Shown here piece by piece: positions 1 to 50,916 of a stretch of DNA of 64,000 bases. The translations under genes and the position numbers were made by a program. Location: the IMG/VR virus record IMGVR_UViG_3300022752_000015, positions 1 through 64,000 of that record; one strand, written 5' to 3'. Under the pieces are notes generated by a model, which was not told the origin of the DNA, ran no database searches, and was given only the letters and a program-made list of their open reading frames with translations. The number at the start of each line of letters is the position of its first letter. The stretch's first letter is position 1.

Positions 1-202
1 TGAAGATGGAACGTAGATCCTCATAACCAATCACAATGGAATTGGTTCCTCTACCACAGGAATCGGTAACACTGATGTTAAACTTGTTCCAGTGTGGGTT
101 GAAGGTGATACTGAACTGAGTTCCTTCGAGATCTTGGAATTCAGTACTGAGGTTCTGGAGTTTCTTTGGTACTGAGGTACCGAGTTTCTTCTTGGCCTTC
201 AT
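1..202 (-). CDS. hypothetical early protein, 3' end beyond window
   Basis: ATG at 202, 6 nt downstream of the conserved early promoter; open to the window edge. Confidence 0.55.
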   Translation of the reverse strand, partial: MKAKKKLGTSVPKKLQNLSTEFQDLEGTQFSITFNPHWNKFNISVTDSCGRGTNSIVIGYEDLRSIF

Positions 203-208
203 GTTTCC

Positions 209-238
209 ATCCTATCATCCTCGGGTGGAATTTTTCAC
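209..238 (-). promoter_or_regulatory. early promoter GTGAAA-N18-TAGGAT, leaderless ATG 6 nt downstream
   Basis: same hexamers and spacing recur upstream of many minus-strand genes. Confidence 0.75.
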
Positions 239-505
239 CGGATCAACATCACTCATGAAAAGGTAGAATTCCTTAACACCTTCGTAATCCCAAACACCAA
301 CTCGAATTCCAAAACGTTTAACCGCACCGATCCAGGAACCGTGAGGAGATCTGGAACTCTGTGGAGAATCATAGGTAAATCCTCCTGCGGAAATCCAGGA
401 ACCTCCTCTTTCCACTCCACGAAATCCTCTATTCTTACCGGATTTTATTGGTGGTTGAGAGGAAATATTTCCGTGTGGATCTCGGCCGAGAACCTCAAGG
501 TTCAC
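215..505 (-). CDS. hypothetical protein
   Basis: GTG start overlapping the stop of 502..1002 by 4 nt. Confidence 0.5.
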   Translation of the reverse strand: MNLEVLGRDPHGNISSQPPIKSGKNRGFRGVERGGSWISAGGFTYDSPQSSRSPHGSWIGAVKRFGIRVGVWDYEGVKEFYLFMSDVDPVKNSTRG

Positions 506-1002
506 CCTTCCAACTTCCTCATGTTCCATATCTTTTCCGGGTTGTATTCCAAGGAATATCGAATAGATCCACCTTCACTCTTCTCGGGGATCTGTGATTC
601 AATCTCTCCGATGAGTTGGGAATGATACTGAGGATCCATTTCGATTTCCCATGGAACACCTTCACCATCCTTCACCACAACCTTCACACCAACCTTTGGA
701 GGTGGTTCAGGAATATTTTCATCATCATCATCCGGTTCAACACCAACGAATTCGATGAATTTCTGGAAGTATTCCTGGATTAGATCCGAATCACGTTTAG
801 GATCAACCCCAAACCAACTTCCATCCCATTCATTACACCTCCACTTCCAAAAATCGATCGCTTCAGAGTTCGATAGTGTAACTCCGAATAACCGGTGAAC
901 TTCGGATTTGATGTGATCCACATCATCCTGTTCATAGTAGATCCCAGAATTTTGGAGCCTAACATTAAAGGTTTGAGTTACCAGTTCTTGGTTGATCTTC
1001 AT
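502..1002 (-). CDS. hypothetical acidic protein
   Basis: 166-aa ORF with SD; only one Ala. Confidence 0.75.
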   Translation of the reverse strand: MKINQELVTQTFNVRLQNSGIYYEQDDVDHIKSEVHRLFGVTLSNSEAIDFWKWRCNEWDGSWFGVDPKRDSDLIQEYFQKFIEFVGVEPDDDDENIPEPPPKVGVKVVVKDGEGVPWEIEMDPQYHSQLIGEIESQIPEKSEGGSIRYSLEYNPEKIWNMRKLEG

Positions 1003-1006
1003 TGTT

Positions 1007-1180
1007 TCACCCTTCCTCCTTCACCTTCTCCAGTTCCTTACGAACCACGGTGTGTATCCCCAGGATTATTTCATCCTGAACCTCATAACCATAAACAAGA
1101 TCGTTTGCCTCGTTGGGATTCAAAACAATAGTGATTCCCTCCAACATACCATTCTTATCGTAGCTTCTCCTGGCTTCCAT
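1007..1180 (-). CDS. hypothetical protein (57 aa, below ORF-track cutoff)
   Basis: fills the gap in frame; coupled to the upstream stop. Confidence 0.55.
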   Translation of the reverse strand: MEARRSYDKNGMLEGITIVLNPNEANDLVYGYEVQDEIILGIHTVVRKELEKVKEEG

Positions 1181-1545
1181 CACCCCTCCTTCTTCTCCCT
1201 CAATTCCTTCATGCTTTCCACCAGGATCTTCTGTAGGTTTTCCATCTCCTCCGGGCTCAAGGAATCCAACTTTTCCATGATGGAATACTTCATTTTTCGG
1301 ATTAGAAGAGGATCCGTGATTGGAAAGGATTTGGTTCCTCTCTCCTCTCTTCCCTTCACATCCATGTAAAGGTTAGAATCACCACCGAATTCCTTGCAAG
1401 GATTAGGAATATCCACCTCACTCCACCCATTCTCACAACGGTTACACCCATAAACATGTGTGCTTGAAACCCCATCATCATTCATGAATGAGGTGTGTTG
1501 AATTGTTCCGGAATCACACTTTCCACACTTATCATTACCGCTCAT
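1180..1545 (-). CDS. zinc-ribbon protein
   Basis: CGKC...CNRC pairs at the N-terminus; start chosen at MSGNDK. Confidence 0.6.
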   Translation of the reverse strand: MSGNDKCGKCDSGTIQHTSFMNDDGVSSTHVYGCNRCENGWSEVDIPNPCKEFGGDSNLYMDVKGREERGTKSFPITDPLLIRKMKYSIMEKLDSLSPEEMENLQKILVESMKELREKKEG

Positions 1546-1729
1546 TGTTCTTCTCCAACTCCACCATGTTTCCATTGATATACACGAAACGATTGAAACT
1601 CAAATCGTTTGGATTATGGAAAACCTCCTTGGTGTAGGTAACGTTCCATTGTTCTCCGCTCGGATCATATTTCTTCATGATGTGGAGGAACTTCGCAACC
1701 GTTTCGAATTCTTCTTTGCTGATCTTCAT
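1535..1729 (-). CDS. hypothetical protein
   Basis: GGAG SD before MKISKEEF. Confidence 0.55.
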   Translation of the reverse strand: MKISKEEFETVAKFLHIMKKYDPSGEQWNVTYTKEVFHNPNDLSFNRFVYINGNMVELEKNNER

Positions 1730-1739
1730 GGCTTCTCCT

Positions 1740-1943
1740 TCACAGGGGTGTTGCATAACCAACGATCTTGTGGTGGATTTCCGAGAGGAGAATCTTGTAC
1801 CCCTCAACCTGGCTCCTCAGATTTCCAATGCAAACCTGATGATCCGGATGGAAATGTTTTCCATTGAACTCAATGAACTCGGAATCGTTTGTGATGTTAA
1901 CCTTACAGTGAGAACAGTTTCGTACAGGGTTTTTCTTCTTCAC
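1740..1943 (-). CDS. small putative Zn-binding protein
   Basis: CSHC...HxxH..C pattern; directly downstream of an early promoter, with AGGAG SD. Confidence 0.6.
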   Translation of the reverse strand: MKKKNPVRNCSHCKVNITNDSEFIEFNGKHFHPDHQVCIGNLRSQVEGYKILLSEIHHKIVGYATPL

Positions 1944-1960
1944 TTTTCTTCTCCTTGATC

Positions 1961-1990
1961 AAGGTACCACATGAGGTGGAGGAATTTCAC
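1961..1990 (-). promoter_or_regulatory. early promoter GTGAAA-N18-TACCTT
   Basis: consensus match with extended -10 TG. Confidence 0.65.
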
Positions 1991-2313
1991 TCATCACCTT
2001 TCATTCTTTTTTCCACCATATCCAGGTAGAATGGAAGGGCACCTTGAGGAGGAGGTTCCACGGTGAATAAATTCCTTGCAACCTGATTGTAGTTAATCCT
2101 ACCTCCGGGCCTCCCCAATGTATCGAGGAAGGGATTGTAAAAATCACCCCATAAAACCTCCACCTGATTATCGGAGGTTTTTCTCACAATGGTTCCGGTG
2201 GAACTGGAGTAAAGGAACTTCACCATATCTCCAATTTTCCAATCAACCTCATCGAGTAGTTTTCCATCGAGGGTGAGGAGGGAGGAGATGAATACCGTGT
2301 TTATTTCACTCAT
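1987..2313 (-). CDS. KOW/SH3-like protein
   Basis: IGDMVKF...GTIV...VEVLW. Confidence 0.65.
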   Translation of the reverse strand: MSEINTVFISSLLTLDGKLLDEVDWKIGDMVKFLYSSSTGTIVRKTSDNQVEVLWGDFYNPFLDTLGRPGGRINYNQVARNLFTVEPPPQGALPFYLDMVEKRMKGDE

Positions 2314-2503
2314 GATATTTTTGAATATCCTCGGGGAGGATGATCTGATCGGGGCGGAAGAACAACTGTTTTCCACACGATAAAACGGTTAGGTAGGAAA
2401 CGATCCCATAGGGGTTTCTATTCACCTCCAGGATTATCCCCGCCCGGGGAGGTTCACCGAAGAATTTGGTGAAGATTAAATCTCCAATACTACTTTGATT
2501 CAC
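2306..2503 (-). CDS. KOW/SH3-like mini-protein
   Basis: IGDLIF...GIILEV...YLTVL. Confidence 0.7.
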   Translation of the reverse strand: MNQSSIGDLIFTKFFGEPPRAGIILEVNRNPYGIVSYLTVLSCGKQLFFRPDQIILPEDIQKYHE

Positions 2504-2714
2504 TTAGTATCTCCACGTTCCACCGATCCGCGATGAGATGGTGGTAGTTGATACCATCCTCACACAACAAGGTTACATTCAAACCATGGTTTCCATTGAA
2601 ACCTTCCACCGGAGGAACCTCTTCACATTCCAACAACAAACCGGTTATGGTACCGTTTTTCAGTGGAAAATCCTGGTATTTCCAGGTGAAACGAATCAGA
2701 TCACCCCGTTTCAC
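2490..2714 (-). CDS. KOW/SH3-like mini-protein
   Basis: MKRGDLIRF...GLLLE...VEIL. Confidence 0.7.
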   Translation of the reverse strand: MKRGDLIRFTWKYQDFPLKNGTITGLLLECEEVPPVEGFNGNHGLNVTLLCEDGINYHHLIADRWNVEILSESK

Positions 2715-2904
2715 TTAGTATCTCCACCGAACCTGGTGATACATAGTAACTCTTTCCCTCCTCGGGGATGATTACTTTAAGGTAACACATCTTACCGGAA
2801 ATCAATTCCTCATCCCGATATTCCTCAATGATTCCAACCGCTCCGCGGGGAGGAAGAAAACCAGGTAACTTACCTGTGAAAAGAACCAGATCACCGGGTT
2901 TCAT
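2701..2904 (-). CDS. KOW/SH3-like mini-protein
   Basis: MKPGDLVLF...GIIEE...YLKVI...VEIL. Confidence 0.75.
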   Translation of the reverse strand: MKPGDLVLFTGKLPGFLPPRGAVGIIEEYRDEELISGKMCYLKVIIPEEGKSYYVSPGSVEILSETG

Positions 2905-2911
2905 TGTGGGG

Positions 2912-3097
2912 TTATACCTTCACCAGTTCGTAGTTGTAGAACCAGGTTAACCTCTCACGGAATAGAACCCGATAACGATGTGATCCACCGTGATGTTCCT
3001 GTGAATCTGGATGAACCACTATTCCAAAACCAAGGATCTCGGATGGATTATCCCAATCCTCAACCTTCACAATATCTCCATTCTCAAGGTTGCTCAC
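2912..3097 (-). CDS. KOW/SH3-like mini-protein
   Basis: NGDIVKV...GIVV...YRVLF...ELVKV. Confidence 0.75.
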   Translation of the reverse strand: MSNLENGDIVKVEDWDNPSEILGFGIVVHPDSQEHHGGSHRYRVLFRERLTWFYNYELVKV

Positions 3098-3309
3098 CTT
3101 ATCACCTTAACCCTTTCATACCTCACCCACCCGATGGATTCACCGGTGATTATTTTGATGTATGGAACATCGATGTTGGAATAACATGAATCTATAATGA
3201 TTCCAATGTGATCCTGTGGAAAGGTTGAGGTATACGTACCTAATGGGTTAACTGAATCAAAGATGTGTAGGTTTCCAACGGTAGGTTGAACAAGGTTTCC
3301 AGGGTTCAC
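3094..3309 (-). CDS. KOW/SH3-like mini-protein
   Basis: MNPGNLV...GIII...IGWV. Confidence 0.75.
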   Translation of the reverse strand: MNPGNLVQPTVGNLHIFDSVNPLGTYTSTFPQDHIGIIIDSCYSNIDVPYIKIITGESIGWVRYERVKVIR

Positions 3310-3512
3310 TTCACCACCTCGATCTCATATTTCTCACCGATTCGATTGATTGGAATGTAGAAAATCTTCCCAGTTCCATTCTCAAGAACATCATAGAAAT
3401 CGGTGTTGTGTTGATGTGATTCACCTATAACAACACCACCGTTTCTCAACTCATCCCGGTGGGATTTGGAGGTGATAAAGATTCGTATCATATCTCCTGG
3501 AAACAATCTCAA
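3306..3512 (-). CDS. KOW/SH3-like mini-protein
   Basis: PGDMIRI...GVVI...YDVL...IEVV. Confidence 0.75.
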   Translation of the reverse strand: MRLFPGDMIRIFITSKSHRDELRNGGVVIGESHQHNTDFYDVLENGTGKIFYIPINRIGEKYEIEVVK

Positions 3513-3718
3513 GAGATCCTCTCGGTGAAGTTGTTCTCCATGAATTCCATCAACTCATTTCCCCATAGAACCTTATAGTAATCCCCAAATTCATCCCCGT
3601 TTCTATGAACACCAACCACCAAACCAGGCCCGGTGATCCTGAATTTTTCCTTATGGTTTCCAACCCAGGTATGAATTAGATCGGTACACATCCATAACTC
3701 ACCTGTGTTTGGTTTCAT
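3509..3718 (-). CDS. KOW/SH3-like mini-protein
   Basis: TGELW...GLVV...YKVLW. Confidence 0.7.
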   Translation of the reverse strand: MKPNTGELWMCTDLIHTWVGNHKEKFRITGPGLVVGVHRNGDEFGDYYKVLWGNELMEFMENNFTERIS

Positions 3719-3939
3719 GCCACCAACTCCAGTTTACCTCTTCCAATCCAACCGATTCCATGTGAGGTTAGAATCCTACACATCCCCCGGAAAAGAACCC
3801 CATTTTGGGTGGTTTGTAGAAGTATTCCAATCTCTCCAGGGGGTACAACCGGGCCATGGGAATCATGTGGAACATCGATATCCGGAACCAGTTGAAAATT
3901 GTTGAAAGAGTTAACTCGGATTAGATCACCTGGAATCAT
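3715..3939 (-). CDS. KOW/SH3-like mini-protein
   Basis: MIPGDLIRV...GILL...GIGWI...LELV. Confidence 0.75.
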   Translation of the reverse strand: MIPGDLIRVNSFNNFQLVPDIDVPHDSHGPVVPPGEIGILLQTTQNGVLFRGMCRILTSHGIGWIGRGKLELVA

Positions 3940-4184
3940 TGATGATCTTCCTTATCTAACCAAGAATCATAAACCCAACCCTTACCGTAACCAGGAAAAA
4001 GAATCAAGTGCATTTTTCCAACCGTTTCCAAAAATATCCCGCTGGAGTTGGTTGGAATCTCAAAACAATCGCTCATCTTATATGAGCGATATGGTGTGTT
4101 ACTCCGGTTCTCGTGAAAAACCCTGAGGAATTCCTTGGCCCAGGAGCATCTATGATGAACCACAAATATATCACCACGAATCAT
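3936..4184 (-). CDS. KOW/SH3-like mini-protein
   Basis: MIRGDIFVV...GIFL...GWV. Confidence 0.7.
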   Translation of the reverse strand: MIRGDIFVVHHRCSWAKEFLRVFHENRSNTPYRSYKMSDCFEIPTNSSGIFLETVGKMHLILFPGYGKGWVYDSWLDKEDHQ

Positions 4185-4380
4185 TGATTCTCTCCACCGC
4201 CCAACGGTTACTCCACAACCAAACCAACCCATTCGGGCCTAAAACATTGTATTCGGAGGGGCTCCATTCCAACCTTCTCCTTCCAATGAACAACCCAAAA
4301 AACGGTGGGGAATTCACTTCAGGGTTGTTGTGAAGTTTGAAAGGTTCACATATAACAGGATCTCCAACACACAACACCAT
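4171..4380 (-). CDS. KOW/SH3-like mini-protein
   Basis: VGDPV...GLFI...YNVL. Confidence 0.65.
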   Translation of the reverse strand: MVLCVGDPVICEPFKLHNNPEVNSPPFFGLFIGRRRLEWSPSEYNVLGPNGLVWLWSNRWAVERINDSW

Positions 4381-4391
4381 GGTTAAACTCC

Positions 4392-4421
4392 AATGTAAAC
4401 CATCCCATCCCGGTTTTACAC
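4392..4421 (-). promoter_or_regulatory. early promoter variant GTGTAA-N18-TACATT
   Basis: near-consensus with correct spacing, upstream of 4171..4380. Confidence 0.5.
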
Positions 4422-4679
4422 CGTGTGGAGTTCCAAATGGTTCTCACTCACCCACCCGAAAACCTCACCACCGAAAAACAGAACCTTACACTGATCCTCT
4501 TTGATTTCAATCACAACACCAATCGATCCGCTTGAAATTTTACCTATGAAACTCCGAGGAACTATGGATTCTCCAACCCAACGGATCTTCTCCGGGAAAT
4601 CGTAAATTCGGTGTAGATTTGTTGGGTGATTTTTAAGAGTTAAAATCCTTACAGAATCACCGGGTTTAAACCTGTTCAC
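4416..4679 (-). CDS. KOW/SH3-like mini-protein
   Basis: KPGDSVRI...GVVIEI...CKVLF...GWV..NHLEL; zero Ala. Confidence 0.75.
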   Translation of the reverse strand: MNRFKPGDSVRILTLKNHPTNLHRIYDFPEKIRWVGESIVPRSFIGKISSGSIGVVIEIKEDQCKVLFFGGEVFGWVSENHLELHTV

Positions 4680-4857
4680 CTGGAATCACCTCACACTTCC
4701 TCTCCACCCAATCCAATCCCCACCCACGGATCTCCTGTGTTCTTGGGTTAAGAACATGAACCAGGTTGATCTCCTTGTTTATCTCCAACACGAGGCAAAC
4801 ATCACCATCGAAATAATCCTCGATTACCACCATATCCCCGATCCGAAGTTTTCTCAC
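4666..4857 (-). CDS. KOW/SH3-like mini-protein
   Basis: RIGDMVVI...LVLEI...VHVL. Confidence 0.75.
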   Translation of the reverse strand: MRKLRIGDMVVIEDYFDGDVCLVLEINKEINLVHVLNPRTQEIRGWGLDWVERKCEVIPGEQV

Positions 4858-5060
4858 CCCAACACCTCAACCTCATCCTCCGGAACCAGGAGAATATCCT
4901 GAATTTCTCCATTGGTTTCCAACATCCGAATATTGAAAGATTTTTTATGGGTATCTCTGATTGGTGCCACGGGGCGAAAATGAAGTAGAACACCGGTGAT
5001 GGTGGGGAACTTCCACTTCTTGTGGAACCGAGTGATTCGAAGAAGATTTCCTATGTTCAT
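4854..5060 (-). CDS. KOW/SH3-like mini-protein
   Basis: MNIGNLLRI...GVLL...VEVL. Confidence 0.7.
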   Translation of the reverse strand: MNIGNLLRITRFHKKWKFPTITGVLLHFRPVAPIRDTHKKSFNIRMLETNGEIQDILLVPEDEVEVLG

Positions 5061-5314
5061 CTCACCAACTCCAGGATTTTCCTATCCGCCCAACCTACTC
5101 CACCGGGGGTTAACAACTTGATGTAGAAGAAATCCTTGTTCTCTGGAAACTCCGCGGTGAGTAGAACCAAACCTACATCCTTCCCATAGAAGAGTGTTTT
5201 CGTGGTGATTAGATAACCTCTATCATCCCAACAACGGGTTTCTCCTCCGTAAAGTTCAGCGGGATGGGGATCCCATGAATCCATTCGAAGTTTTACAATT
5301 GAACCTATGTTCAT
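5057..5314 (-). CDS. KOW/SH3-like mini-protein
   Basis: MNIGSIVKL...GLVLL...GGVGW...LELV. Confidence 0.75.
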   Translation of the reverse strand: MNIGSIVKLRMDSWDPHPAELYGGETRCWDDRGYLITTKTLFYGKDVGLVLLTAEFPENKDFFYIKLLTPGGVGWADRKILELVR

Positions 5315-5580
5315 CCCACCAACTCCAGATCACATCTTTTAATCCAACCTATCCCACCGGGGCACAATACCTTCACCCAAAAACTGGTGGGTAGAGAATC
5401 ATAAACATCATTGAGAATGTATCTTTGTTCCAGAATCACTCCCACCTCGGTGTAACGGAACCTCCCGGTGTGGTTCTTCCTGTAGATTGAAGTGAAATCA
5501 GGTGGATCATCCCAGAGGATTTTGTGATCCTCGTTACCTTCCATCTCGGGAATTAAACGAACTTGTGATCCGGGTTTCAC
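5311..5580 (-). CDS. KOW/SH3-like mini-protein
   Basis: GTG start (MKPGSQVRL)...GVILE...GGIGW...LELV. Confidence 0.75.
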   Translation of the reverse strand: MKPGSQVRLIPEMEGNEDHKILWDDPPDFTSIYRKNHTGRFRYTEVGVILEQRYILNDVYDSLPTSFWVKVLCPGGIGWIKRCDLELVG

Positions 5581-5828
5581 CTTTGAAACTCCTTCACCCA
5601 ACTCTGATGTGCCCAACCAACACCACGAGGGGTTAATAACTTCACATACTGGAGGTACCTATTCGTAATGATTCGAGTTTCAAGAACCAATCCTAGATCC
5701 GAAAAACCGAATGGAATATCGGTGGGGATGAGGTTATTGGTGATTGGATCCATTAGATCCGAATGGTATAACCAATGGGTGGTACCGGTATCTCCACCGT
5801 TCACACCAACAACATCACCGGGTTTCAC
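5577..5828 (-). CDS. KOW/SH3-like mini-protein
   Basis: GTG start (MKPGDVV)...GLVLE...GVGW. Confidence 0.75.
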   Translation of the reverse strand: MKPGDVVGVNGGDTGTTHWLYHSDLMDPITNNLIPTDIPFGFSDLGLVLETRIITNRYLQYVKLLTPRGVGWAHQSWVKEFQR

Positions 5829-7602: not shown

Positions 7603-7608
7603 GTTTCA

Positions 7609-7638
7609 AGTATATCATCCCACGGTGGGGAATTTCAC
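7609..7638 (-). promoter_or_regulatory. early promoter GTGAAA-N18-TATACT, leaderless ATG 6 nt downstream
   Basis: consensus match. Confidence 0.8.
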
Positions 7639-7640
7639 TG

Positions 7641-7814: not shown

Positions 7815-7815
7815 T

Positions 7816-8181: not shown

Positions 8182-8182
8182 C

Positions 8183-9311: not shown

Positions 9312-9315
9312 GATG

Positions 9316-44648: not shown

Positions 44649-45647
44649 TTATTTGTTAAAAAATTTATAGCCGTTAAATTCCGTTGATTTCAAAAGGTCT
44701 AACTTAAAGTTTTCAGAATCAACACCTTTTAACTTATTTGCTCTATGCGAAATTAAAATCTTGCACCAATCATTCCAATATTCAGAACCAGCATTGAGAT
44801 TAGAAGCCAACTGTTTTAATTCATCAATAGTCTGACAATTTCTGCACTTGGATTCTTGCTCCAAAATATATTCTAAAGGTAGTTTACCCTTTGGTAGCTT
44901 CGGCATTTCTAAACTAAAAAACTCTCGTTTTTTTAGAATTTCTTCTACCATTCCAAAATGCTTTTCATAAATATGCAAAGAATTGCTTACGTGAGTATAC
45001 TCACCAACGCTTATAGACCTGTTCAACCTATCCGATAATTGATTAGCCAACAACTCTTGAAACAACGTGAATGCAGGAACATCATACGCAATTCCTAAGA
45101 TGAGATCAGATGATCTCATAGAGACTATCATGTGAACCTGATCGTTACGCAAAAAAAACTGCAAAGACAAAGTGCAAGGAACGTCCTTTGAGGCTAGGAT
45201 AGAATCCTGAGGAGATCTAATATGAATGACGGCTCGGCGAGAATCTGGATCTGCCGTCAGTTCATTCAAGATGTAATCCCATTGTGTCCAAGAAGGATCG
45301 ATTTGACCAGCAATTCTTGAATGAGGATTAAAAATCCTGGCACCGTAAGCGCTGTTAGCTGTAGTGCCATCATCAGAAATGTTCTTCCAAAAAGAAGAAT
45401 AATTCGATATCCATTCAGTGGAATCGTTTCCAGAAAGATACCACAAAGACTCTGCAACAAAATATGATAAGCTAAAGTCTCTTTGCTCTACATACGGTAA
45501 TCTATCAAGAGGATTAGAAATCCTGAATGATACGCCCAACTTTTCTCTGATCTTCTGCCCTCGAGGAGAAGAAACAAAGTCAGGATGCTTGTAGACGTCT
45601 AGAAGCAGATCATAGTAGGCTTCAGTGAAGCTAGAAAAAACTTTCAT
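44649..45647 (-). CDS. thymidylate-synthase-family enzyme, probable dCMP hydroxymethylase/methylase
   Basis: AYGAR, DSRRAV, DVPCT, MRSSDLILGIAYD (Asp at the nucleotide-specificity site), SLHIY. Confidence 0.8.
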   Translation of the reverse strand: MKVFSSFTEAYYDLLLDVYKHPDFVSSPRGQKIREKLGVSFRISNPLDRLPYVEQRDFSLSYFVAESLWYLSGNDSTEWISNYSSFWKNISDDGTTANSAYGARIFNPHSRIAGQIDPSWTQWDYILNELTADPDSRRAVIHIRSPQDSILASKDVPCTLSLQFFLRNDQVHMIVSMRSSDLILGIAYDVPAFTLFQELLANQLSDRLNRSISVGEYTHVSNSLHIYEKHFGMVEEILKKREFFSLEMPKLPKGKLPLEYILEQESKCRNCQTIDELKQLASNLNAGSEYWNDWCKILISHRANKLKGVDSENFKLDLLKSTEFNGYKFFNK

Positions 45648-46624
45648 ATATTCTCTTTATCACTCAACGTTTTAATTAGTTCCCAATTGTCCTGATACCA
45701 CTGGATTGTTTTTTCCAATCCTTCCCAAAAATACACCAGGGGAGTGTAACCTAAAACTTCTTTTGTCCTAGAAATATCAGCTTGAGTGTGCATGACATCA
45801 CCAGGTCTCCAAGGAGCATCATGGTATTTCGCATCAGGAAATTTTTTCAACAAAAATTGCAAAATTTCTCTATTTGTTGTCCTGTCGCCACAAGCCACAT
45901 TTAAAGTTTCAGACTTTAATGGGAAATTTGCCTTTGCTGCTCTTACGCATGCATCGGCAACATTATCAACATAACACATGTCGCGAGATTGCGTTCCGTC
46001 TCCGTCAGAACGCATCAAAGTCCCCTTCATAATTGCATTGACCCACGCAGAAACCGCTGTGGAATAAGGAGAATTTCCTAACTGATTTGGACCAAAGACG
46101 TTAAAGAACCTTAGGCTGACTGAATCGAACCCATAAAGATCATAATACATCTTCAAATAATCTTCAATTATAGATTTTTGCAAAGCGTAAGGTGATTTAG
46201 GGTTCTTTACAGCATTAGGAGGAGTTGGTAGCTGGTCAGCACCTCCGTAAACAGATGACGAGGATGCAAAGACAAAACGTTTAATCTTTCCTCGACAAGC
46301 ATCAATCAATTTCATTGTTGCTGTCACGTTTGCGTTGTGAGATTCAAGAGGAAAATCGACGGAATAACTCACGCGCGGGACGGCAGCCAAGTGTATAACA
46401 ACATCATACAATCCAGACCTTATCTTTGCTAAGATTGTTTCGGAGTCAAAGCTGGCAATCGTAATGTTACGATCCAGCAGCGAGGGATCAACAAACGACA
46501 TGTGACCGTTTGACAGATCGTCAACGATGTCAAATTCTATATTTTCTGCCATTAATCTTTTTGCGACGTTACTGCCTATGAAGCCCGCACCACCCGTCAA
46601 TAAAATTCTCATATGATTATACAC
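45644..46624 (-). CDS. NAD-dependent NDP-sugar epimerase/dehydratase
   Basis: TGGAGFIG, ASSSSVYG, YALQK, LRFFNVFGP. Confidence 0.92.
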   Translation of the reverse strand: MYNHMRILLTGGAGFIGSNVAKRLMAENIEFDIVDDLSNGHMSFVDPSLLDRNITIASFDSETILAKIRSGLYDVVIHLAAVPRVSYSVDFPLESHNANVTATMKLIDACRGKIKRFVFASSSSVYGGADQLPTPPNAVKNPKSPYALQKSIIEDYLKMYYDLYGFDSVSLRFFNVFGPNQLGNSPYSTAVSAWVNAIMKGTLMRSDGDGTQSRDMCYVDNVADACVRAAKANFPLKSETLNVACGDRTTNREILQFLLKKFPDAKYHDAPWRPGDVMHTQADISRTKEVLGYTPLVYFWEGLEKTIQWYQDNWELIKTLSDKENI

Positions 46625-46664
46625 CTTTTTTAATTATAAACAAGCTTGTTTCATATTTACAATT

Positions 46665-47393
46665 ATGAGAACGTTTAATGTCATCAATAAATCGACCAAC
46701 GTTTCCGAAGCAGATTTAACCCTCATGGTTGAAGCCTGCAAAATACAGTTAGCCCAACATGCAGCCCCACTCCTGGAAAGGGTGCCGTGGGAGATAAAGG
46801 TAGGTGGTAATGATGGATTCCCCGTTGTTCTTATTGACTCTCCAGATGTTGCTGGTGCTCTTGGATACCATACGCAAGATCCTGACGGAAGAGTTTGGTG
46901 TAGAGTTTTTACGGACCCGTTACTAAAACATGGTGGAACAACACTAAAGGGCACTCATGCAGTCTCTACCGTGTTATCACATGAAATACTTGAAACCTTC
47001 TATAATCCGTACATCAATCTGTGGTCTAACAGAGGAGATCACACATTCGTTGCGTTAGAACTATGCGACCCTGTTCAAGGAGACTCGTACGAGATTGATG
47101 TCAATGGTACACCCGTTTCTGTCTCTAACTTTGTGCTTGAAGCTTGGTTTGATAGGGAAATGAGTAAAGCGGGTAGATTCGATTATATGAACACTATAAA
47201 AAAGCCTCTAGATATGTCCAGAGGCGGGTATACTATTATTTTTAATAGTGAAACAGGTGAAGTCAAATCAGTATTTGCTAGCAAAGAAGGAGAAGACTTA
47301 CATAACCTCTTGAAACCTGGGCATCCTGCTTCTAGATCGTCTCGTAACAAAAGTGATTGTCCGCTGAGACAACACACGTTACCTACGTACTAA
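46665..47393 (+). CDS. putative metallopeptidase-like protein
   Basis: ALGYH, VLSHEILE, ELCDPV, VSNFV motifs. Confidence 0.55.
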   Translation: MRTFNVINKSTNVSEADLTLMVEACKIQLAQHAAPLLERVPWEIKVGGNDGFPVVLIDSPDVAGALGYHTQDPDGRVWCRVFTDPLLKHGGTTLKGTHAVSTVLSHEILETFYNPYINLWSNRGDHTFVALELCDPVQGDSYEIDVNGTPVSVSNFVLEAWFDREMSKAGRFDYMNTIKKPLDMSRGGYTIIFNSETGEVKSVFASKEGEDLHNLLKPGHPASRSSRNKSDCPLRQHTLPTY

Positions 47394-47578
47394 GAAGATT
47401 TTGAAGAATAGTTATCAGCAGCCCATCCAGAACCCTTCAAGACAAATGTTGATTTGCTTATAAGTCTTCGTAAAAAGTCAGTTTTACAACGAGGGCAGTT
47501 TGTCAATGGTGGATCTTTGATTGATTGTTCCGCTTCAAACTGATGATTGCAAGCTTTGCATTCATATTCATACGTCAT
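47390..47578 (-). CDS. FmdB-family zinc-ribbon protein
   Basis: YEYECKAC...CPRC...RRLIS...FVLKGSGW. Confidence 0.88.
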   Translation of the reverse strand: MTYEYECKACNHQFEAEQSIKDPPLTNCPRCKTDFLRRLISKSTFVLKGSGWAADNYSSKSS

Positions 47579-48372
47579 ACAATTCCTCCTTGCGAAGTAA
47601 TTTTTACAGGGAACATAACCGAAGTTCCGACAAATGGAGACGTACCAGGCTGTCTAACTAAGCTTAAAGGACCATTAGCAGTAGCAAGATCACATTTCAT
47701 TGGATCTTGCAGAACGTCAGATAAGCGATGTATGACACCGTCGATCCAACAAGCTTGAGAAACAAGCTGACAAATTTGAGAATAATCAGAGTGTTTCATA
47801 TCATGAGCAGTTGCATTCGGCTGGATCACTGATATTGTCGATCCATTTAGCTTGTTCTGCTTGGATCCAGTTGGGTGACCTTTTATACCCTTGTAGTTCG
47901 TGCCAACGAAATGCCACCCATAGTTACAAGCTCTTCTAGGATTTAAGTCTAATTTCTTATCTAAAATCCAATGCTTTCCAGGGGAGGCTACTAATCCTGT
48001 CACATTAAACCCAACTTTTCCATTTACCATTTTGCTGTGTTTGATCATAGAATCGACTGTTGAAGATATCGTCATAGGACAGGGTTCTACTCGGTGCGTA
48101 GCATTGATAAACATTAAGTCAGCGATGTGTGTTGTCAATAAAGACGCATTAAATACATCTGCTAGCTTTTGCTGAAGTTCTGCAGATACATTAACTCTTA
48201 TGCCGTCAATTTTCAATGCATCATTCATCACATTGAATTTAATGGTTCTTCCTCCTGAAGAAAATTCGAGAGGAACCCATTCTGCATCAAAATTGCCAGC
48301 TAAAACTTGATCAAAAATGTATTTTTCTCTATCAGCTAATTTTTCAGGAAAAGTCATAATCATTTCTTCCAA
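47575..48372 (-). CDS. conserved hypothetical protein
   Basis: IDGIRVNVS, GKHWI, NYGWH, IQP..TAH...DYSQ motifs. Confidence 0.65.
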   Translation of the reverse strand: MEEMIMTFPEKLADREKYIFDQVLAGNFDAEWVPLEFSSGGRTIKFNVMNDALKIDGIRVNVSAELQQKLADVFNASLLTTHIADLMFINATHRVEPCPMTISSTVDSMIKHSKMVNGKVGFNVTGLVASPGKHWILDKKLDLNPRRACNYGWHFVGTNYKGIKGHPTGSKQNKLNGSTISVIQPNATAHDMKHSDYSQICQLVSQACWIDGVIHRLSDVLQDPMKCDLATANGPLSLVRQPGTSPFVGTSVMFPVKITSQGGIV

Positions 48373-49361
48373 AAAGAGTACATGTTCTTTTCAATCTCAT
48401 AATCCATGTTCTTTATTTGTCTATCAGGCTGCTTCATAGCCCAGACAAACATTTCTTTAATCATATCTCTAAGATTAGTTTCATCTTTAAACCCTAACAG
48501 CTTATGAGCTTTACTGTGATCGCAGTATGCAGTGTGCACTTCATTGCGTTTTTCTAAATGAACCTTGGTCGCTTTAACTCCAAGCTCAGCTGCAACGTCC
48601 ATCACGAGATCGCAAGCTTCGTTAATTGTGAAATCTTTATCAGCTCCTATGTTGAAAGTTTCACCGTCAAAAGACGTCATAAGCTTTTCAAAAGGAGCCA
48701 TATAGAACTTGATGTCTGAAAAAGCACGTTTTTGTGTACCGTCTCCAAAGATAGTCAGCGGTTCTCCAACAAGAGCTTTACGAATCCAAATGCCTATAAC
48801 GTTTCGATACCTATCCCAAATATTTTGATAAATGCCAACAACGTTGTGCGGGCGAACAATGCTGTATCTTAGTCCAAACATTTCATGCGCAAGTTTGAGA
48901 TCCATCTCTACTGCATATTTCGCAATACCGTAAGGATCCTCTGGGGTTGGTAGCTGATCTTCTGTAAAGGGTGGATTGCCTACTCCGTATACCGCCATCG
49001 ATGAGGTAAAAACAATCTTTTTGATATCATGATTTACACAAGCATTAATTACATTAGCGGAAGCTAACACGTTGTTTGTGTAGTTGTAATTTCTAATGAA
49101 AGGACTCAATCCTTCTGCTGCGTACGCAGCAAAATGGAAAACATAATCAGGTTTTTCTTTTGCAAATACCTCTTCTGTTTTATGACGATCTACCAAGTCT
49201 ACGTCGTAGAATGTCATTTCTTTTGGAACAGAATCTAGATATCCGCCGCTTAAATCATCAATCCCAACGACATCATAACCTCTGGACAACAGATATCTAG
49301 AAAAATTTGCCCCAAGAAGTCCAGCTACGCCTGTGATTAGAACCTTATCTTTTTTCATCAT
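48360..49361 (-). CDS. NAD-dependent NDP-sugar epimerase/dehydratase
   Basis: TGVAGLLG, TSSMAVYG, YGIAK, RPHNVVG. Confidence 0.92.
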   Translation of the reverse strand: MMKKDKVLITGVAGLLGANFSRYLLSRGYDVVGIDDLSGGYLDSVPKEMTFYDVDLVDRHKTEEVFAKEKPDYVFHFAAYAAEGLSPFIRNYNYTNNVLASANVINACVNHDIKKIVFTSSMAVYGVGNPPFTEDQLPTPEDPYGIAKYAVEMDLKLAHEMFGLRYSIVRPHNVVGIYQNIWDRYRNVIGIWIRKALVGEPLTIFGDGTQKRAFSDIKFYMAPFEKLMTSFDGETFNIGADKDFTINEACDLVMDVAAELGVKATKVHLEKRNEVHTAYCDHSKAHKLLGFKDETNLRDMIKEMFVWAMKQPDRQIKNMDYEIEKNMYSFWKK

Positions 49362-50386
49362 ACGAGTGTCTCCAAGAAATCTATTACGTCGCTTACAGAA
49401 AATACATTCTTATTTTTCAAAATCGTCATTTGTTCTTTGACTAAAGAAACTCTGAATTCGTACGAAAGCTTGCTGATGTATTTGACTTGAGCGATTACTT
49501 GTTCTGACGTCGATACTGTCCACTCACTTCCTAGTAAGTTTGGGATCAAAAACTCTGATGGGACCAAAGCGGGCGTGCCCACAGCCATATTTTCTAAGTA
49601 ACGAGGAGATGCAAACCCGCGCTTAGCGTATTCTGGCTTGGTTATGTGCGTTGCGCAGATAAAAGAATTCAATCTTTTCATTGAATCATGAAAATTCAAA
49701 CGCTGCGCAAATGAGACGTAGGGATGCTCTTTTATCAAGGACGTGGGATGTTCTCTCTCAGGAGAAACTTCTAACCAGTTACCATGAACCGTCGTCTGTA
49801 TTCCTAAATTTCTAAGCTCTCTTGACGGTGAGGAATAGTATCTATAAAACGCTTCTGGTCTTTCATAATTGTTTCCTACGTAGCCGTATTCAAAAGACAC
49901 GTTGGACGGTTGCAACAAAAATTGCCAATCTGTCCAAAACATCAATCTTTCTCTTTTTCTGGTCAAATATCTTGGCTCAAATGCAGGATCTGCAATTATA
50001 GCTTTAGGCCATGCGAGCTCATCTTCTGGAGTCACCTTGTAATCACAATCCCAAATAACAACAGGAATCTTTCCATGATAATGCCGAAGAAGCTCGTTTT
50101 GTCTGAGCAGATCAGGTTCGGCAGGATTTTCTCCTGAATTTTTATACGTTGGCCAACGCCACTCAACGAACAAAACATCTATGTCAGGAAATCCCTCATC
50201 ATAATTGATGTTTTTATATGGCACAACTTCTCTACGTTTTTGTAATGCATAAATCTGGTGTCCTGACGTGACGGCTGCGTTCACAAAAATAGGACGACCA
50301 TACCGATGACCATCAGGCGTTTTTGCTTCTCCTGATGTCCCAAAAGGTTCACAAAAACCCCAATAACTAATTCCGATGCGCATCAT
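49358..50386 (-). CDS. GT-B glycosyltransferase resembling T4 DNA beta-glucosyltransferase
   Basis: MRIGI..WG, YGYVGN...R, VHGNW, FASPRYLENMA..ALVPSEF, comparable to BGT FITLRVWETMA..MLIDEEF (from memory). Confidence 0.7.
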   Translation of the reverse strand: MMRIGISYWGFCEPFGTSGEAKTPDGHRYGRPIFVNAAVTSGHQIYALQKRREVVPYKNINYDEGFPDIDVLFVEWRWPTYKNSGENPAEPDLLRQNELLRHYHGKIPVVIWDCDYKVTPEDELAWPKAIIADPAFEPRYLTRKRERLMFWTDWQFLLQPSNVSFEYGYVGNNYERPEAFYRYYSSPSRELRNLGIQTTVHGNWLEVSPEREHPTSLIKEHPYVSFAQRLNFHDSMKRLNSFICATHITKPEYAKRGFASPRYLENMAVGTPALVPSEFLIPNLLGSEWTVSTSEQVIAQVKYISKLSYEFRVSLVKEQMTILKNKNVFSVSDVIDFLETLV

Positions 50387-50916
50387 GCCTCCTTTTTCAA
50401 GAATTTACGAATGGTCTCCATTTCCCATTCTAGGTTTTCAGAATCAATGCAAAAGCGTAATACGTCACATTTGGTCCACTTTGCAAATTCTTCATACATG
50501 TCTGACAATTTTTGTAGATGATATTCACCTATGTTATGAATATCGTCTTTTAGACCAGAATAAGAAGTCCTATACGGAATGACTATCTTAACGCCAAAAG
50601 AAGCTGCAAGAAAATCAATATGAGACAGAGCATCATGATCGGTCTTTCTATCATAAACTCTTGAATACACCCATTCGGAAGGATACGATCGATCAAGAAT
50701 AACAGACGTCTTGGTGTCTCGAAGAAAAGTGTAGAAGTAAGGGTCTCCATATCGAAGAGCCTTCACGAAATAATCTGGATCTGAGCTAAATGCTTTCCAT
50801 TCTGATTTGTTCTTGAAATATGGAATCTCCATTCGTCTCGAAAGCTCACGAGCCATTTCGGTCTTGCCAACCTTGTCACATCCTTCGAAAATTACGATAG
50901 TGTTCATGTTATTCAT
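50383..50916 (-). CDS. thymidylate-kinase-like dNMP kinase
   Basis: IFEGCDKVGKT P-loop; ILDRSYPSEWVY. Confidence 0.85.
   Translation of the reverse strand: MNNMNTIVIFEGCDKVGKTEMARELSRRMEIPYFKNKSEWKAFSSDPDYFVKALRYGDPYFYTFLRDTKTSVILDRSYPSEWVYSRVYDRKTDHDALSHIDFLAASFGVKIVIPYRTSYSGLKDDIHNIGEYHLQKLSDMYEEFAKWTKCDVLRFCIDSENLEWEMETIRKFLKKEA

What the first reader, a model, noticed from the sequence alone, without database searches (positions are those of the whole stretch)
1..50916. Possible linked system: context-specific C modification plus an early region kept free of those contexts
Inference joining separate observations. The purged interval coincides with the cluster of host-RNAP-type early promoters. 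The one gene there with a candidate late signal (LamG, 13621..14472) is not purged. The genome encodes a putative C-glycosylation pathway and an MBD4-like G:T glycosylase. If the glycosyltransferase acts mainly on C in GC and GWC contexts, genes that host RNA polymerase must read from fully modified incoming DNA would be selected to lack these sites. I am not aware of this arrangement being described.
Basis: inference. Interest (0 to 1): 0.8.

Follow-up and report, generated by a model that had tools for sequence, protein, structure and literature searches.

The report
Phage early genes purged of GWC/GC
A freshwater jumbo phage and its relatives keep their roughly 19-kb array of tiny early genes almost free of the DNA words GAC/GTC and largely free of GC, enough to strip alanine from about 50 proteins. 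The phage also carries genes for sugar-modified cytosine, but whether the two are linked is unproven.

Summary
- Window 1-13,143 has 5 GWC (GAC/GTC) against 369 expected and 126 GC against 677. The rest of the window is normal.
- The block is a tiled array of small minus-strand genes. Their proteins contain 1.1% alanine, against 6.8% elsewhere.
- The same two motifs are purged in every strongly related early array I fetched (over 15 contigs). Selection is ongoing: about 100 GWC-creating substitutions expected, 5 seen.
- The purge follows transcription units, not contiguous DNA. LamG-type genes form un-purged islands in three phages. Some operon-end genes lack GWC only. One relative (L286) is not purged.
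- The modification annotation holds: a MilA-like cytosine-5-hydroxymethylase, a T4-BGT-like GT-B glycosyltransferase, UDP-sugar epimerases and a strongly MBD4-like glycosylase.

The causal link is untested. No sequence-specific modifying enzyme was found. The same leaderless promoter family also drives un-purged genes, including DnaE. Two phages with known motif-limited hypermodification, and the T5 first-step-transfer (FST) region, show no such purge.

Best reading (confidence about 0.35): the motifs are obstacle sites on modified parental DNA, and early genes avoid them. Nuclease avoidance and RNase avoidance remain rivals. I found no description of this arrangement.

The parts
1..13143 (-). 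Purged early-gene block, at least 48 tiled small ORFs of 37-171 aa. It continues about 6 kb beyond the window's left edge, judged from L099.
   Evidence: GWC 5/369 and GC 126/677. ORF tiling, Ala 1.1%, GAC 2 of 210 Asp codons, GTC 0 of 302 Val codons. Window position 1 aligns to about L099 5,880, and the L099 block ends at about 11,900.
200..238 (-). Early promoter copy (GTGAAA-N16-GATAnnnT-N6-ATG, leaderless). The other copies that drive purged DNA are at 7600-7638, 8423-8461, 9309-9347 and 11053-11091.
   Evidence: Six exact copies against 0.02 expected. No GWC in the first 1,200 nt downstream of the 7638, 8461, 9347 and 11091 copies; only 202 nt are visible downstream of the 238 copy, also with none.
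13508..13546 (-). Same promoter type at the upstream edge of the block. The two ORFs immediately downstream (13259-13510, 13047-13313) are not purged.
   Evidence: GWC 7/8.3 and 4/8.5.
13144..14908 (-). Un-purged island containing the LamG-like ORF 13621-14472. An ATATTTA element lies at 14515-14521, upstream of it.
   Evidence: GWC 31/51, GC 70/95. 26% identity, E 5e-12, to the Laminin_G_3 protein of L097. ATATTTA element. Pfam itself gave no hit for the window ORF.
14909..15890 (+). Second purged stretch: the 5' two-thirds of ORF 15012-16301 (429 aa, no family). Its 3' third is not purged.
   Evidence: GWC 2/26. 5' part 3/23.7 against 3' part 8/10.8. The ORF is absent in L083 and present in L080.
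16962..17000 (-). GTGCAA variant of the same promoter family, in front of un-purged genes. Further copies are at 30680-30718 (ORF 30101-30682) and 54500-54538 (DnaE).
   Evidence: Three exact copies against 0.00 expected. Downstream DNA is un-purged. The same variant lies inside the purged blocks of relatives.
25200..25751 (+). MBD4-like HhH-GPD DNA glycosylase.
   Evidence: Pfam HhH-GPD, E 1.3e-8. PDB MBD4 glycosylase domain 4ew4, E 1.5e-28, covering residues 20-156.
43637..44642 (-). dCMP deaminase (43637-44095) and thymidine kinase (44079-44642).
   Evidence: Pfam, E 9e-16 and 8e-40.
44649..45647 (-). Pyrimidine-5-hydroxymethylase, predicted to be cytosine-specific (MilA-like).
   Evidence: PDB 5jnh/5b6d CMP 5-hydroxymethylase at E 3e-41, against ThyA at about 1e-15. 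Asp at the position of ThyA Asn177.
45644..49361 (-). Two GalE/TviC-like NAD-dependent sugar-nucleotide epimerase/dehydratases (45644-46624 and 48360-49361) flanking a conserved viral protein of unknown function (47575-48372).
   Evidence: The unknown protein belongs to a viral-only Atlas family. Its structure model is unusable, pLDDT 40.
49358..50386 (-). GT-B glycosyltransferase resembling T4 beta-glucosyltransferase; candidate DNA-hmC glycosyltransferase.
   Evidence: Weak Pfam Glyco_trans_1_2 hit. Atlas neighbours carry PF09198. AF2 pLDDT 91.7. Foldseek hits to T4 BGT 1c3j/1qkj, TM 0.63-0.65, E about 3e-10.
50383..50916 (-). dNMP/thymidylate-kinase-like protein.
   Evidence: phrog_761, E 7e-12. 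Weak AAA_28 hit.
50909..54502 (-). DnaE-type replicative polymerase. Un-purged, and used as the clade marker.

Best explanation
SHOWN. The block is this phage lineage's immediate-early gene array: about 19 kb, dozens of 40-170-aa orphan genes, and sigma70-like leaderless promoters. It is under intense, ongoing selection at the nucleic-acid level against the palindromic words G-W-C (essentially absolute) and G-C (about 3- to 6-fold in strongly purged arrays, paid for by removing alanine). The constraint applies to individual transcription units, not to a contiguous piece of DNA.

INFERRED. The phage replaces cytosine with 5-hydroxymethylcytosine, using its MilA-like hydroxymethylase and a kinase. 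It then decorates the hmC with a sugar, using its T4-BGT-like glycosyltransferase and a UDP-sugar supplied by the phage epimerases. In G-C and G-W-C contexts the two modified cytosines on opposite strands lie on adjacent or next-but-one base pairs. Either a context-selective writer acts there, or that geometry itself creates a site that unaided host RNA polymerase cannot pass on the fully modified parental genome. Only units free of such sites are expressed at once. Products of this array then let the same polymerase, from the same promoter family, read obstacle-laden units such as DnaE. This resembles lambda N 'delayed early' logic. GWC would be a strong obstacle and GC a weaker, cumulative one.
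For: - Purge magnitude and specificity.
- A protein-preserving null expects 228 GWC; 4 are observed.
- Ongoing selection: 5 GWC-creating substitutions against about 100 expected, and 41 against about 130 for GC.
- The same motifs are purged in diverged relatives whose shared genes are only 26-89% identical.
- The purge follows transcription units. It ends where the early operon meets convergent virion-type genes (L092 about 10,017; L099 about 11,900). In L097 it resumes about 90 bp before an exact early promoter, right after the LamG island.
- LamG-type genes are un-purged in three phages and carry a different upstream element.
- Polarity-like gradients: the L092 operon-end genes have GWC 0/37 but normal GC; in L182 the depletion fades along the array and vanishes in the downstream epimerase cluster.
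- The motif set is closed under reverse complement, which fits double-stranded DNA recognition.
- The modification genes are verified and conserved beside DnaE across the clade.
- Motif-limited (GpC) cytosine hypermodification is documented in phages (PMC8256090).
- Bulky major-groove groups can block bacterial RNAP (PMC11550810).
Against: - There is no direct evidence that the DNA is modified, or that any modification depends on context.
- No C5-MT, TET or other sequence-specific modifier was found in the 64 kb.
- A pre-replicative hydroxymethylase implies hmC at every C, and the block is 23-25% C.
- The same promoter family drives un-purged genes with no promoter-proximal purge. The two ORFs just downstream of P13546 are un-purged.
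- Published RNAP inhibition acts mainly at promoters, and 5hmC is tolerated (PMC11550810). T4 early genes are read from fully glucosylated DNA (established knowledge).
- Phages 14-1 (TG) and CAjan (GA/GGC), which have motif-limited hypermodification, show no regional purge.
- Surviving GC sites include GGCC at late-region density and CGCG at about 0.8 of it. Pure steric reasoning does not predict this.
- In relatives, the -35 element inside purged blocks itself contains GC (GTGCAA).
Confidence: 0.35

Rival explanations
1. Nuclease avoidance in first-entering DNA. The array enters the cell first, by T5-like two-step or T7-like transcription-coupled entry. It must survive a DNA endonuclease of very short specificity until protective early proteins are made. 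The nuclease could be a host restriction enzyme, a modification-dependent (Type IV) enzyme that reads modified C in G(W)C, or the phage's own host-DNA-shredding nuclease.
For: - Classical precedent: the T5 FST region (annotated; bioRxiv 866236) and early-injected regions that determine sensitivity to Type I R-M (PMC12455610).
- The block is about 9% of the genome, close to T5's 8%.
- Per-site selection is near-lethal in strength.
- The palindromic motifs fit dsDNA enzymes.
- The same promoter type drives purged and un-purged genes, so timing of entry could be the only difference.
- Nucleases that target hypermodified DNA exist (PMC12191111).
Against: - Un-purged islands with about 30-40 GWC sites lie inside the block in several phages (L097/L283 and L281, internal; the window at the block edge). 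A cutter would sever the DNA there.
- GWC-only genes and graded depletion do not fit all-or-none cleavage.
- I know of no nuclease with 2-3-bp G(W)C specificity, and a literature search found none.
- GATC and CCGG are enriched.
- T5's own FST shows no short-word purge; the lowest 3-mer O/E is 0.54.
- In large contigs the block is internal, so a terminal position is not shown.
Confidence: 0.2
2. RNA-level avoidance. Early mRNAs must be free of G-(A/U)-C and GC because an endoribonuclease active at the start of infection cleaves these words. It could be a phage host-shutoff RNase or a host toxin RNase. Genes expressed later do not need this protection.
For: - The purge follows transcription units, including 3' untranslated tails, and resumes at promoters.
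- Un-purged islands and later genes are naturally tolerated.
- The early mRNAs are leaderless, an unusual class that a shutoff strategy might spare.
- Toxin RNases with 3-nt specificities exist, for example MqsR cutting GCU (established knowledge).
- ORF 39127-40077 has a weak RNase E (phrog_645) hit.
Against: - The motif set is exactly closed under reverse complement, which has no meaning for an RNA reader.
- Opposite-strand homing-endonuclease genes inside the blocks are purged as well, though they may also be early.
- No RNase with this specificity is known, and no credible candidate was found.
- Polarity-like gradients fit a template obstacle better.
Confidence: 0.2
3. Another DNA-level reader unrelated to cytosine modification. 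Possibilities include a trinucleotide-specific primase (T7 primase recognises GTC), a roadblock or silencing protein that binds G(W)C, or small-molecule DNA binders made by hosts or neighbours that target GpC steps and stall RNAP (actinomycin-type or anthracycline-type).
For: - Primases are among the few enzymes with 3-nt recognition (established knowledge).
- GpC is the classical actinomycin step, and DNA intercalators act as anti-phage chemical defence early in infection (PMC13250531).
- The whole-unit purge fits elongation blocks.
Against: - There is no rationale for making only early units free of priming sites.
- No known ligand has GWC as its preferred site.
- The phages come from pelagic freshwater metagenomes and the host is unknown.
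- Nothing in the window points to such a factor.
Confidence: 0.1
4. Mutational artefact. Context-specific deamination or hypermutation of C in GC/GWC, for example of 5-substituted C, has eroded the motifs without selection.
For: - GAT, AAC and GATC are enriched, as C-to-T products would be.
- The phage encodes a deaminase-family protein and a G:T/hmU glycosylase.
Against: - The boundaries are sharp and coincide with transcription units.
- The ORFs are intact and tightly tiled.
- Alanine is not replaced specifically by Val or Thr.
- GT/AC dinucleotides are not enriched (O/E 0.96).
- The deficit of motif-creating substitutions between close relatives indicates purifying selection.
- Homologous genes in L286 are un-purged.
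- The deaminase is a dCMP (nucleotide-level) enzyme.
Confidence: 0.03

Closest known systems
T5 first-step-transfer (pre-early) region and T7-type early-injected regions with restriction-site avoidance
   Same: - A block of about 8-9% of the genome made of small host-takeover genes with host-RNAP promoters.
- Under selection to lack particular DNA words that are common in the rest of the genome.
   Different: - Those cases concern specific 4-8-bp recognition sites of host R-M systems.
- T5's FST shows no 2-3-mer purge; the lowest 3-mer O/E is 0.54.
- Here a 3-mer is removed about 70-fold and a 2-mer about 5-fold, which reshapes amino-acid composition.
- The purge follows transcription units and tolerates un-purged islands.
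Phage GpC-specific cytosine hypermodification: C5-MT, then TET/5mYOX, then glycosyltransferase (PMC8256090; bioRxiv 10.1101/2023.12.21.572611)
   Same: - Modified, glycosylated 5hmC confined to a short G-C context.
- The authors state that its biological purpose is unclear and probably goes beyond blanket anti-restriction.
   Different: - That pathway is post-replicative and needs a C5-methyltransferase and a dioxygenase. Neither was found in this window.
- This phage instead has a nucleotide-level (ThyA-family) hydroxymethylase.
- No GWC specificity and no motif-free gene block have been reported for those phages.
T-even phage hmC synthesis and glucosylation (gp42, gp1, alpha/beta-GT)
   Same: - A ThyA-family cytosine hydroxymethylase with the Asp specificity residue.
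- A dNMP kinase-like gene.
- A GT-B enzyme structurally like T4 BGT.
- A dCMP deaminase.
   Different: - The hydroxymethylase is closer to MilA than to T4 gp42.
- No clear dCTPase is present.
- Extra UDP-sugar epimerases suggest a non-glucose sugar.
- T4 has no motif-purged early region, and host RNAP reads its glucosylated DNA.
Lambda N / Q-type delayed-early control (functional analogy only)
   Same: One polymerase and one promoter type; downstream units become readable only after an early product allows passage through obstacles.
   Different: - In lambda the obstacles are discrete terminators.
- Here they would be thousands of short modified sites.
- No antiterminator has been identified.
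SPO1 host-takeover module
   Same: A block of about 13 kb of tiny early genes with strong host-type promoters, in a phage with a hydroxymethylated pyrimidine.
   Different: - SPO1 uses hmU.
- I recall no reported short-word purge, and I did not test SPO1 here.

Membership tests
Restriction-site avoidance in first-entering phage DNA (T5 FST / T7 early region type) | The avoided words are recognition sites (4-8 bp) of host restriction systems. | tested here: not met
   The avoided words are GWC and GC. The palindromes GATC and CCGG are enriched. The same words are avoided across diverged relatives. No reported G-W-C specificity was found.
Restriction-site avoidance in first-entering phage DNA (T5 FST / T7 early region type) | The protected segment is contiguous, since a single site would defeat the purpose. 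| tested here: not met
   Un-purged islands with 30-40 GWC lie inside or at the edge of the block in the window, L097/L283 and L281.
Restriction-site avoidance in first-entering phage DNA (T5 FST / T7 early region type) | The segment enters the cell first, ahead of the rest of the genome. | not testable with these tools
   Genome ends and ejection order are unknown. Contigs break inside the block or hold it internally.
Restriction-site avoidance in first-entering phage DNA (T5 FST / T7 early region type) | The reference member shows a comparable short-word purge. | tested here: not met
   T5 FST 1-9,200: lowest 2-mer O/E 0.77, 3-mer 0.54, 4-mer 0.20.
Pre-replicative hmC plus glycosylation pathway (T-even type) | A ThyA-family hydroxymethylase with cytosine specificity (Asp in place of ThyA Asn177). 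| tested here: met
   Best PDB matches are the CMP 5-hydroxymethylase MilA (E 3e-41) and T4 dCMP hydroxymethylase (E 5e-14). The alignment shows '...SSDLILGIAYDVPAF' with Asp.
Pre-replicative hmC plus glycosylation pathway (T-even type) | A DNA hmC glycosyltransferase. | tested here: inconclusive
   The GT-B model (pLDDT 91.7) matches T4 BGT at TM 0.63-0.65, but it matches GT4 enzymes such as BshA equally well. The acceptor substrate is not testable.
Pre-replicative hmC plus glycosylation pathway (T-even type) | A dCTPase to exclude unmodified C, and a kinase for hm-dCMP. | tested here: inconclusive
   A kinase-like protein matches phrog_761. Only a generic NUDIX protein (34934-35353) is a possible dCTPase. 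Only 64 of 213 kb is visible.
Pre-replicative hmC plus glycosylation pathway (T-even type) | Virion DNA actually contains (glycosyl-)hmC. | not testable with these tools
Post-replicative GpC-specific C5-MT/TET/GT hypermodification | A C5-cytosine methyltransferase and a TET/JBP dioxygenase beside the GT. | tested here: not met
   No DNA methylase or 2OG-dioxygenase family hit in any ORF scanned in the window. The remaining 149 kb of the genome was not seen.
MBD4-type HhH-GPD mismatch glycosylase | Sequence membership in the MBD4 glycosylase-domain family. | tested here: met
   E 1.5e-28 over residues 20-156 to 4ew4/1ngn. Pfam HhH-GPD is above the gathering score. Activity on T:G or hmU:G was not tested.

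The most novel reading that the evidence does not exclude
A phage uses its own DNA hypermodification as a distributed timing device. Modified cytosines in G-C and G-W-C contexts act as thousands of obstacles to the unaided host RNA polymerase on the incoming genome. Only an array of genes that evolution has scrubbed of these words, at the price of alanine-free proteins, is expressed immediately. Products of that array then unlock the rest. This would be a new, epigenetic form of temporal gene control in viruses, and a biological purpose for motif-limited DNA hypermodification.
Probability: 0.3. Interest if true: 0.92.

Novelty: new variant of a known kind. Interest (0 to 1): 0.8.

Why it matters
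Motif-limited DNA hypermodification (GpC, TG, GA and others) is now found in many phages, and its purpose is an open question. The authors of that work note that it cannot give blanket protection from restriction.

This lineage supplies a strong sequence footprint of something that reads G-W-C and G-C. About 50 proteins in the window (more across the full array) have been rebuilt almost without alanine to avoid it, and homologous arrays in relatives show the same constraint. The footprint is confined to one temporal class of genes.

It defines a precise, testable target motif and natural controls: un-purged LamG islands, GWC-only genes and the un-purged relative L286. If it is a nuclease or an RNase, it points to an enzyme with an unprecedented 2-3-nt specificity, which would be of biological and biotechnological interest.

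It also shows that selection on nucleic-acid words can override amino-acid composition on a large scale.

Tried and rejected
1. General palindrome or restriction-site avoidance: rejected, because GATC and CCGG are enriched.
2. Amino-acid composition or codon bias as the cause: rejected by the protein-preserving null and by equal depletion in all frames and on both strands.
3. Mutational erosion: rejected.
4. Consensus sigma70 scan: no enrichment, 14 against 26 expected, and TTGACA itself contains GAC. It was replaced by the repeat-derived promoter motif.
5. The idea that GTGCAA promoters form a separate 'GC-containing -35' class for un-purged genes: rejected, because the same variant lies inside the purged blocks of relatives.
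6. Host inference from the phage isocitrate lyase: uninformative, 70-77% identity across many phyla. No tRNAs were found.
7. Reaching distant early arrays through flanking genes:
   - the 234-aa and 429-aa proteins found only near relatives;
   - the 1741-aa virion gene gave 78 loci, but synteny is not conserved, so they served only as negative controls.
8. No cultured relative exists: the hydroxymethylase and DnaE are at most 38% and 30% identical to anything in 50,697 phage records.
9. A longer contig for the un-purged relative L286: none exists.
10. Structure of the 265-aa cluster protein: pLDDT 40, unusable. Atlas shows only a viral family of unknown function.
11. Pfam on ten early proteins: no hits.
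No read-level or RNA evidence was obtained.
13. Literature searches for an early-region short-word purge or a G-W-C specificity found nothing.

Full report
WHAT THE WINDOW IS. The window is the first 64 kb of a 212,804-bp IMG/VR contig (IMGVR_UViG_3300022752_000015). It is a jumbo phage from freshwater metagenomes. It has no nucleotide match among 50,697 phage records. Its DnaE-type polymerase is at most 30% identical to any cultured phage's. Relatives are numerous in IMG/VR, JGI and ENA assemblies.

THE OBSERVATION. Positions 1-13,143 contain 5 G-W-C trinucleotides (GAC or GTC) against 369 expected from base composition, and none at all in 1-9,533. They contain 126 GC dinucleotides against 677 expected. 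In 15,891-64,000 the counts are 1266/1195 and 2171/2031.
- The effect is specific. GATC and CCGG are enriched 2.7- and 2.4-fold. G-N2-C and longer gapped words are normal unless they contain GC or GWC. Only ACGT, CTAG and TATA are otherwise low.
- The surviving GC sites are not random. GGCC stays at the late-region density and CGCG at about 0.8 of it, while WGCW contexts are 7- to 30-fold rarer. A first-order Markov correction makes most of this context effect mild.

CODING CONSEQUENCES. The block is tiled by at least 48 small, abutting minus-strand ORFs.
- Asp is encoded by GAT 208 times and GAC twice. Val is never encoded by GTC.
- Alanine, whose four codons all contain GC, is 1.1% of residues, against 6.8% in the rest of the genome.
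- Re-encoding the same proteins with the phage's late-gene codon usage gives 228 +/- 11 GWC and 294 +/- 13 GC, against 4 and 106 observed.
- The constraint therefore acts on the nucleic acid, in all frames and on both strands, and is strong enough to have changed protein composition.

PROMOTERS. A repeat family read on the minus strand is GTGAAA-N16-GATAnnnT-N6-ATG. This is a sigma70-like -35/-10 pair with the start codon 6 nt after the -10, which implies leaderless mRNAs. There are six exact copies, all between 200 and 13,546, against 0.02 expected by chance. A consensus TTGACA/TATAAT scan is not enriched; TTGACA itself contains GAC.
- A one-base variant, GTGCAA, has three exact copies against 0.00 expected, in front of un-purged genes: ORF 16964 and below, ORF 30101-30682, and DnaE.
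- The variant is not a separate class. In relatives it is the promoter found inside purged blocks.
- In the window, five copies drive DNA with no GWC in the downstream sequence examined (up to 1.2 kb). Four copies (13546, 17000, 30718, 54538) drive normal DNA with no promoter-proximal purge.
- Promoter type therefore does not decide which genes are purged.

RELATIVES.
- The near relative L083 (DnaE 99% identical) has a mosaic early block, 82-96% nucleotide identity with gene replacements, and it is equally purged.
- A relative with DnaE 82% identical (L099/L100) holds the block inside a 211-kb contig. Window position 1 aligns to about L099 5,880, and the purge runs on to about 11,900. The whole block is therefore about 19 kb, roughly 9% of the genome. 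It ends against convergent 609- and 1741-aa virion-type genes.
- More distant arrays found through the promoter motif (L088, L089), through a conserved 129-aa early protein (L091-L097), through a profile of that family (L178-L182) and through a metagenome scan (L264-L290) are almost all purged of GWC. Examples: 3/370 in L091, 5/172 in L181, 2/103 in L088.
- No other 3-mer is purged in any of them. No purge of any 3-mer occurs in about 3 Mb of related phage DNA outside early arrays.
- Among 1,145 substitutions separating the window from seven relatives inside the block, about 100 should have created a GWC and 5 did. About 130 should have created a GC and 41 did. Selection is ongoing and much stronger on GWC.

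THE PURGE FOLLOWS TRANSCRIPTION UNITS.
1. In L092 the purge ends sharply at about 10,017, where the early operon meets convergent genes.
2. A Laminin_G_3 gene forms an un-purged island inside the L097 block (GWC 39/43). Its 64%-identical homologue in L083 and the 26%-identical window ORF 13,621-14,472 are also un-purged. L281 and L283 show similar islands.
3. In L097 the purge resumes about 90 bp before an exact early promoter that follows the island.
4. The LamG genes and several virion-type genes carry a different upstream element, ATATTTA. It is absent from the window's block and sits exactly 5 nt before the ATG of three plus-strand ORFs.
5. Opposite-strand genes embedded in the blocks, a GIY-YIG-like homing-endonuclease family, are purged.
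6. The two depletions are separable. The last three genes of the L092 operon have GWC 0/37 but GC 64/69. L178, L288 and L289 lack GWC but have normal or high GC.
7. L182 shows a gradient. Upstream genes have 0-1 GWC, the depletion fades over about 2 kb, and the orthologous epimerase cluster downstream on the same strand is un-depleted.
8. L286 carries homologues of window early genes, up to 89% identical, in DNA that is not purged beyond its first kilobase.
9. Alanine tracks the purge: 0.7-1.7% in purged arrays, 4.0-4.7% in un-purged or GWC-only arrays.

THE MODIFICATION GENES.
- ORF 44649-45647 is a ThyA-family enzyme whose best solved relatives are the CMP 5-hydroxymethylase MilA (E 3e-41) and T4 dCMP hydroxymethylase, not thymidylate synthases (about 1e-15). 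It has Asp at the position of ThyA's uracil-specifying Asn177.
- ORF 49358-50386 gives a confident GT-B model (pLDDT 91.7). T4 beta-glucosyltransferase is among its best structural matches (TM 0.63-0.65). Its language-model neighbours carry the T4 glucosyltransferase family. GT4 enzymes match about as well, so the DNA substrate is inferred from context.
- Two GalE/TviC-like epimerases, a kinase-like protein, a dCMP deaminase and a thymidine kinase complete the cluster. The cluster lies beside DnaE and is conserved across relatives with DnaE identity of about 53% or more.
- ORF 25200-25751 is strikingly MBD4-like (E 1.5e-28). This fits a genome whose cytosines carry a 5-substituent and deaminate to T-like bases.
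- No C5-methyltransferase, TET-type dioxygenase or other sequence-specific DNA modifier was found in the window.

WEIGHING THE EXPLANATIONS.
- The islands, the GWC-only genes, the gradients and the restart at promoters argue that the constraint concerns the expression of particular transcription units, not the integrity of a DNA segment. This disfavours simple nuclease avoidance, because a cutter would sever the block at the islands. The classical analogue also differs: T5's first-step-transfer region shows no short-word purge.
- The exact reverse-complement closure of the motif set favours a double-stranded DNA reader over an RNA reader. An early-acting endoribonuclease would explain the unit-level pattern equally well.
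It has a precedent in GpC-limited hypermodification (PMC8256090; bioRxiv 10.1101/2023.12.21.572611).
- That idea needs additions. Un-purged replication genes share the same promoters, so an early product would have to unlock passage, as in lambda N logic.
- It also faces objections:
  - a nucleotide-level hydroxymethylase predicts hmC at every C;
  - published inhibition of bacterial RNAP by bulky groups acts mainly at promoters, and 5hmC is tolerated (PMC11550810);
  - two phages with motif-limited hypermodification show no regional purge.
- I therefore rate the linked-system reading as the best single explanation at about 0.35. Nuclease avoidance and RNase avoidance follow at about 0.2 each, and other readers at about 0.1. 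Mutational erosion is essentially excluded.

NOVELTY. Early-region avoidance of restriction sites is known (T5, T7-like phages; PMC12455610). I found no description of any of the following:
- a near-total removal of a trinucleotide and a dinucleotide from one temporal class of genes;
- its conservation across a phage clade;
- the resulting alanine-poor proteome;
- a link between such a purge and DNA hypermodification.

LIMITS.
- Only 64 of 213 kb of this genome was visible.
- The host is unknown.
- The co-occurrence test between purge and modification genes could not be completed, because the un-purged relative exists only on short contigs.

Noticed in passing
window 200-238, 7600-7638, 8423-8461, 9309-9347, 11053-11091, 13508-13546, 16962-17000, 30680-30718, 54500-54538 (all minus strand): In every copy of the GTGMAA-N16-GATAnnnT promoter family the ATG follows the -10 element by exactly 6 nt. 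The first cistrons, including DnaE, should therefore be translated from leaderless mRNAs. This hints at the host's translation biology.
   Followed up: partly
window 23045-23051, 46653-46659, 55677-55683 (+); 14515-14521 (-); L097 and L083 upstream of LamG; L099 upstream of the 1741-aa gene: A second putative promoter class, (T)ATATTTA, reminiscent of the T4 late TATAAATA. It lies 5 nt before the ATG of three plus-strand ORFs, and upstream of LamG and virion-type genes. None occurs in the purged block. Overall enrichment is modest: 16 copies against 10 expected.
   Followed up: partly
L091:388-1329(-), L091:2075-2866(-), L097:10394-11284(-), L083:11774-12565(-); alignment A1: A family of about 263-313 aa on the opposite strand inside purged blocks. 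It has a GIY-YIG-like N-terminus and about ten 17-aa SExxKKxWEDPExRxK repeats, and is probably a homing endonuclease. It is GWC-free like its surroundings and is absent from the window.
   Followed up: partly
window 15012-16301 (+): This 429-aa orphan ORF is purged in its first ~890 nt and not in its last ~400 nt. It is present in one near relative (L080) and absent in another (L083). It looks like a mosaic gene built partly from early-pool sequence.
   Followed up: partly
window 1-13,143 compared with L083, L080, L099: The early block is far more variable than the rest of the genome: 82-96% nucleotide identity with gene swaps, where DnaE is 99% identical. Assemblies often break inside it (the window starts in it; the L083 and L080 contigs end in it; most homologues lie on contigs under 10 kb).
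   Followed up: partly
window 1-12,900: GATC (132 against 49 expected) and CCGG (82 against 34) are strongly enriched in the purged block. GG/CC, GGA/TCC and ACC/GGT are also raised. This is probably a by-product of replacing GAC with GAT and of avoiding G-to-C transitions, but Dam-type sites are unusually dense.
   Followed up: no
window 31432-32676 (-), 56162-57229 (-), 42505-43233 (-), 23868-24800 (-), 38369-39130 (-), 17014-17424 (-): An unusual set of metabolic genes for a phage: isocitrate lyase (70-77% identical to bacterial enzymes), a GMP reductase/IMPDH-family protein, Fe/Mn superoxide dismutase, an FGE-sulfatase-domain protein, a nitrilase-family CN hydrolase and a small EamA-type transporter-like protein.
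   Followed up: partly
L182 7690-11743: In a remote, higher-GC relative the early array runs directly, on the same strand, into the orthologous epimerase/TK modification cluster. In that lineage the modification genes may be delayed-early genes of the same transcription direction.
   Followed up: partly
window 57828-59513 (-) and 29325-30068 (-): A 561-aa protein with a C-terminal cytidylyl/adenylyl-transferase-like region, and a HAD-IIB/phosphomannomutase-like protein. These could be further sugar-activation enzymes feeding the glycosyltransferase.
   Followed up: no
window 63044-63631 (-): An HNH endonuclease gene (Pfam HNH_5/HNH, E about 1e-16) lies close to the replication genes. It is probably a homing endonuclease.
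   Followed up: no
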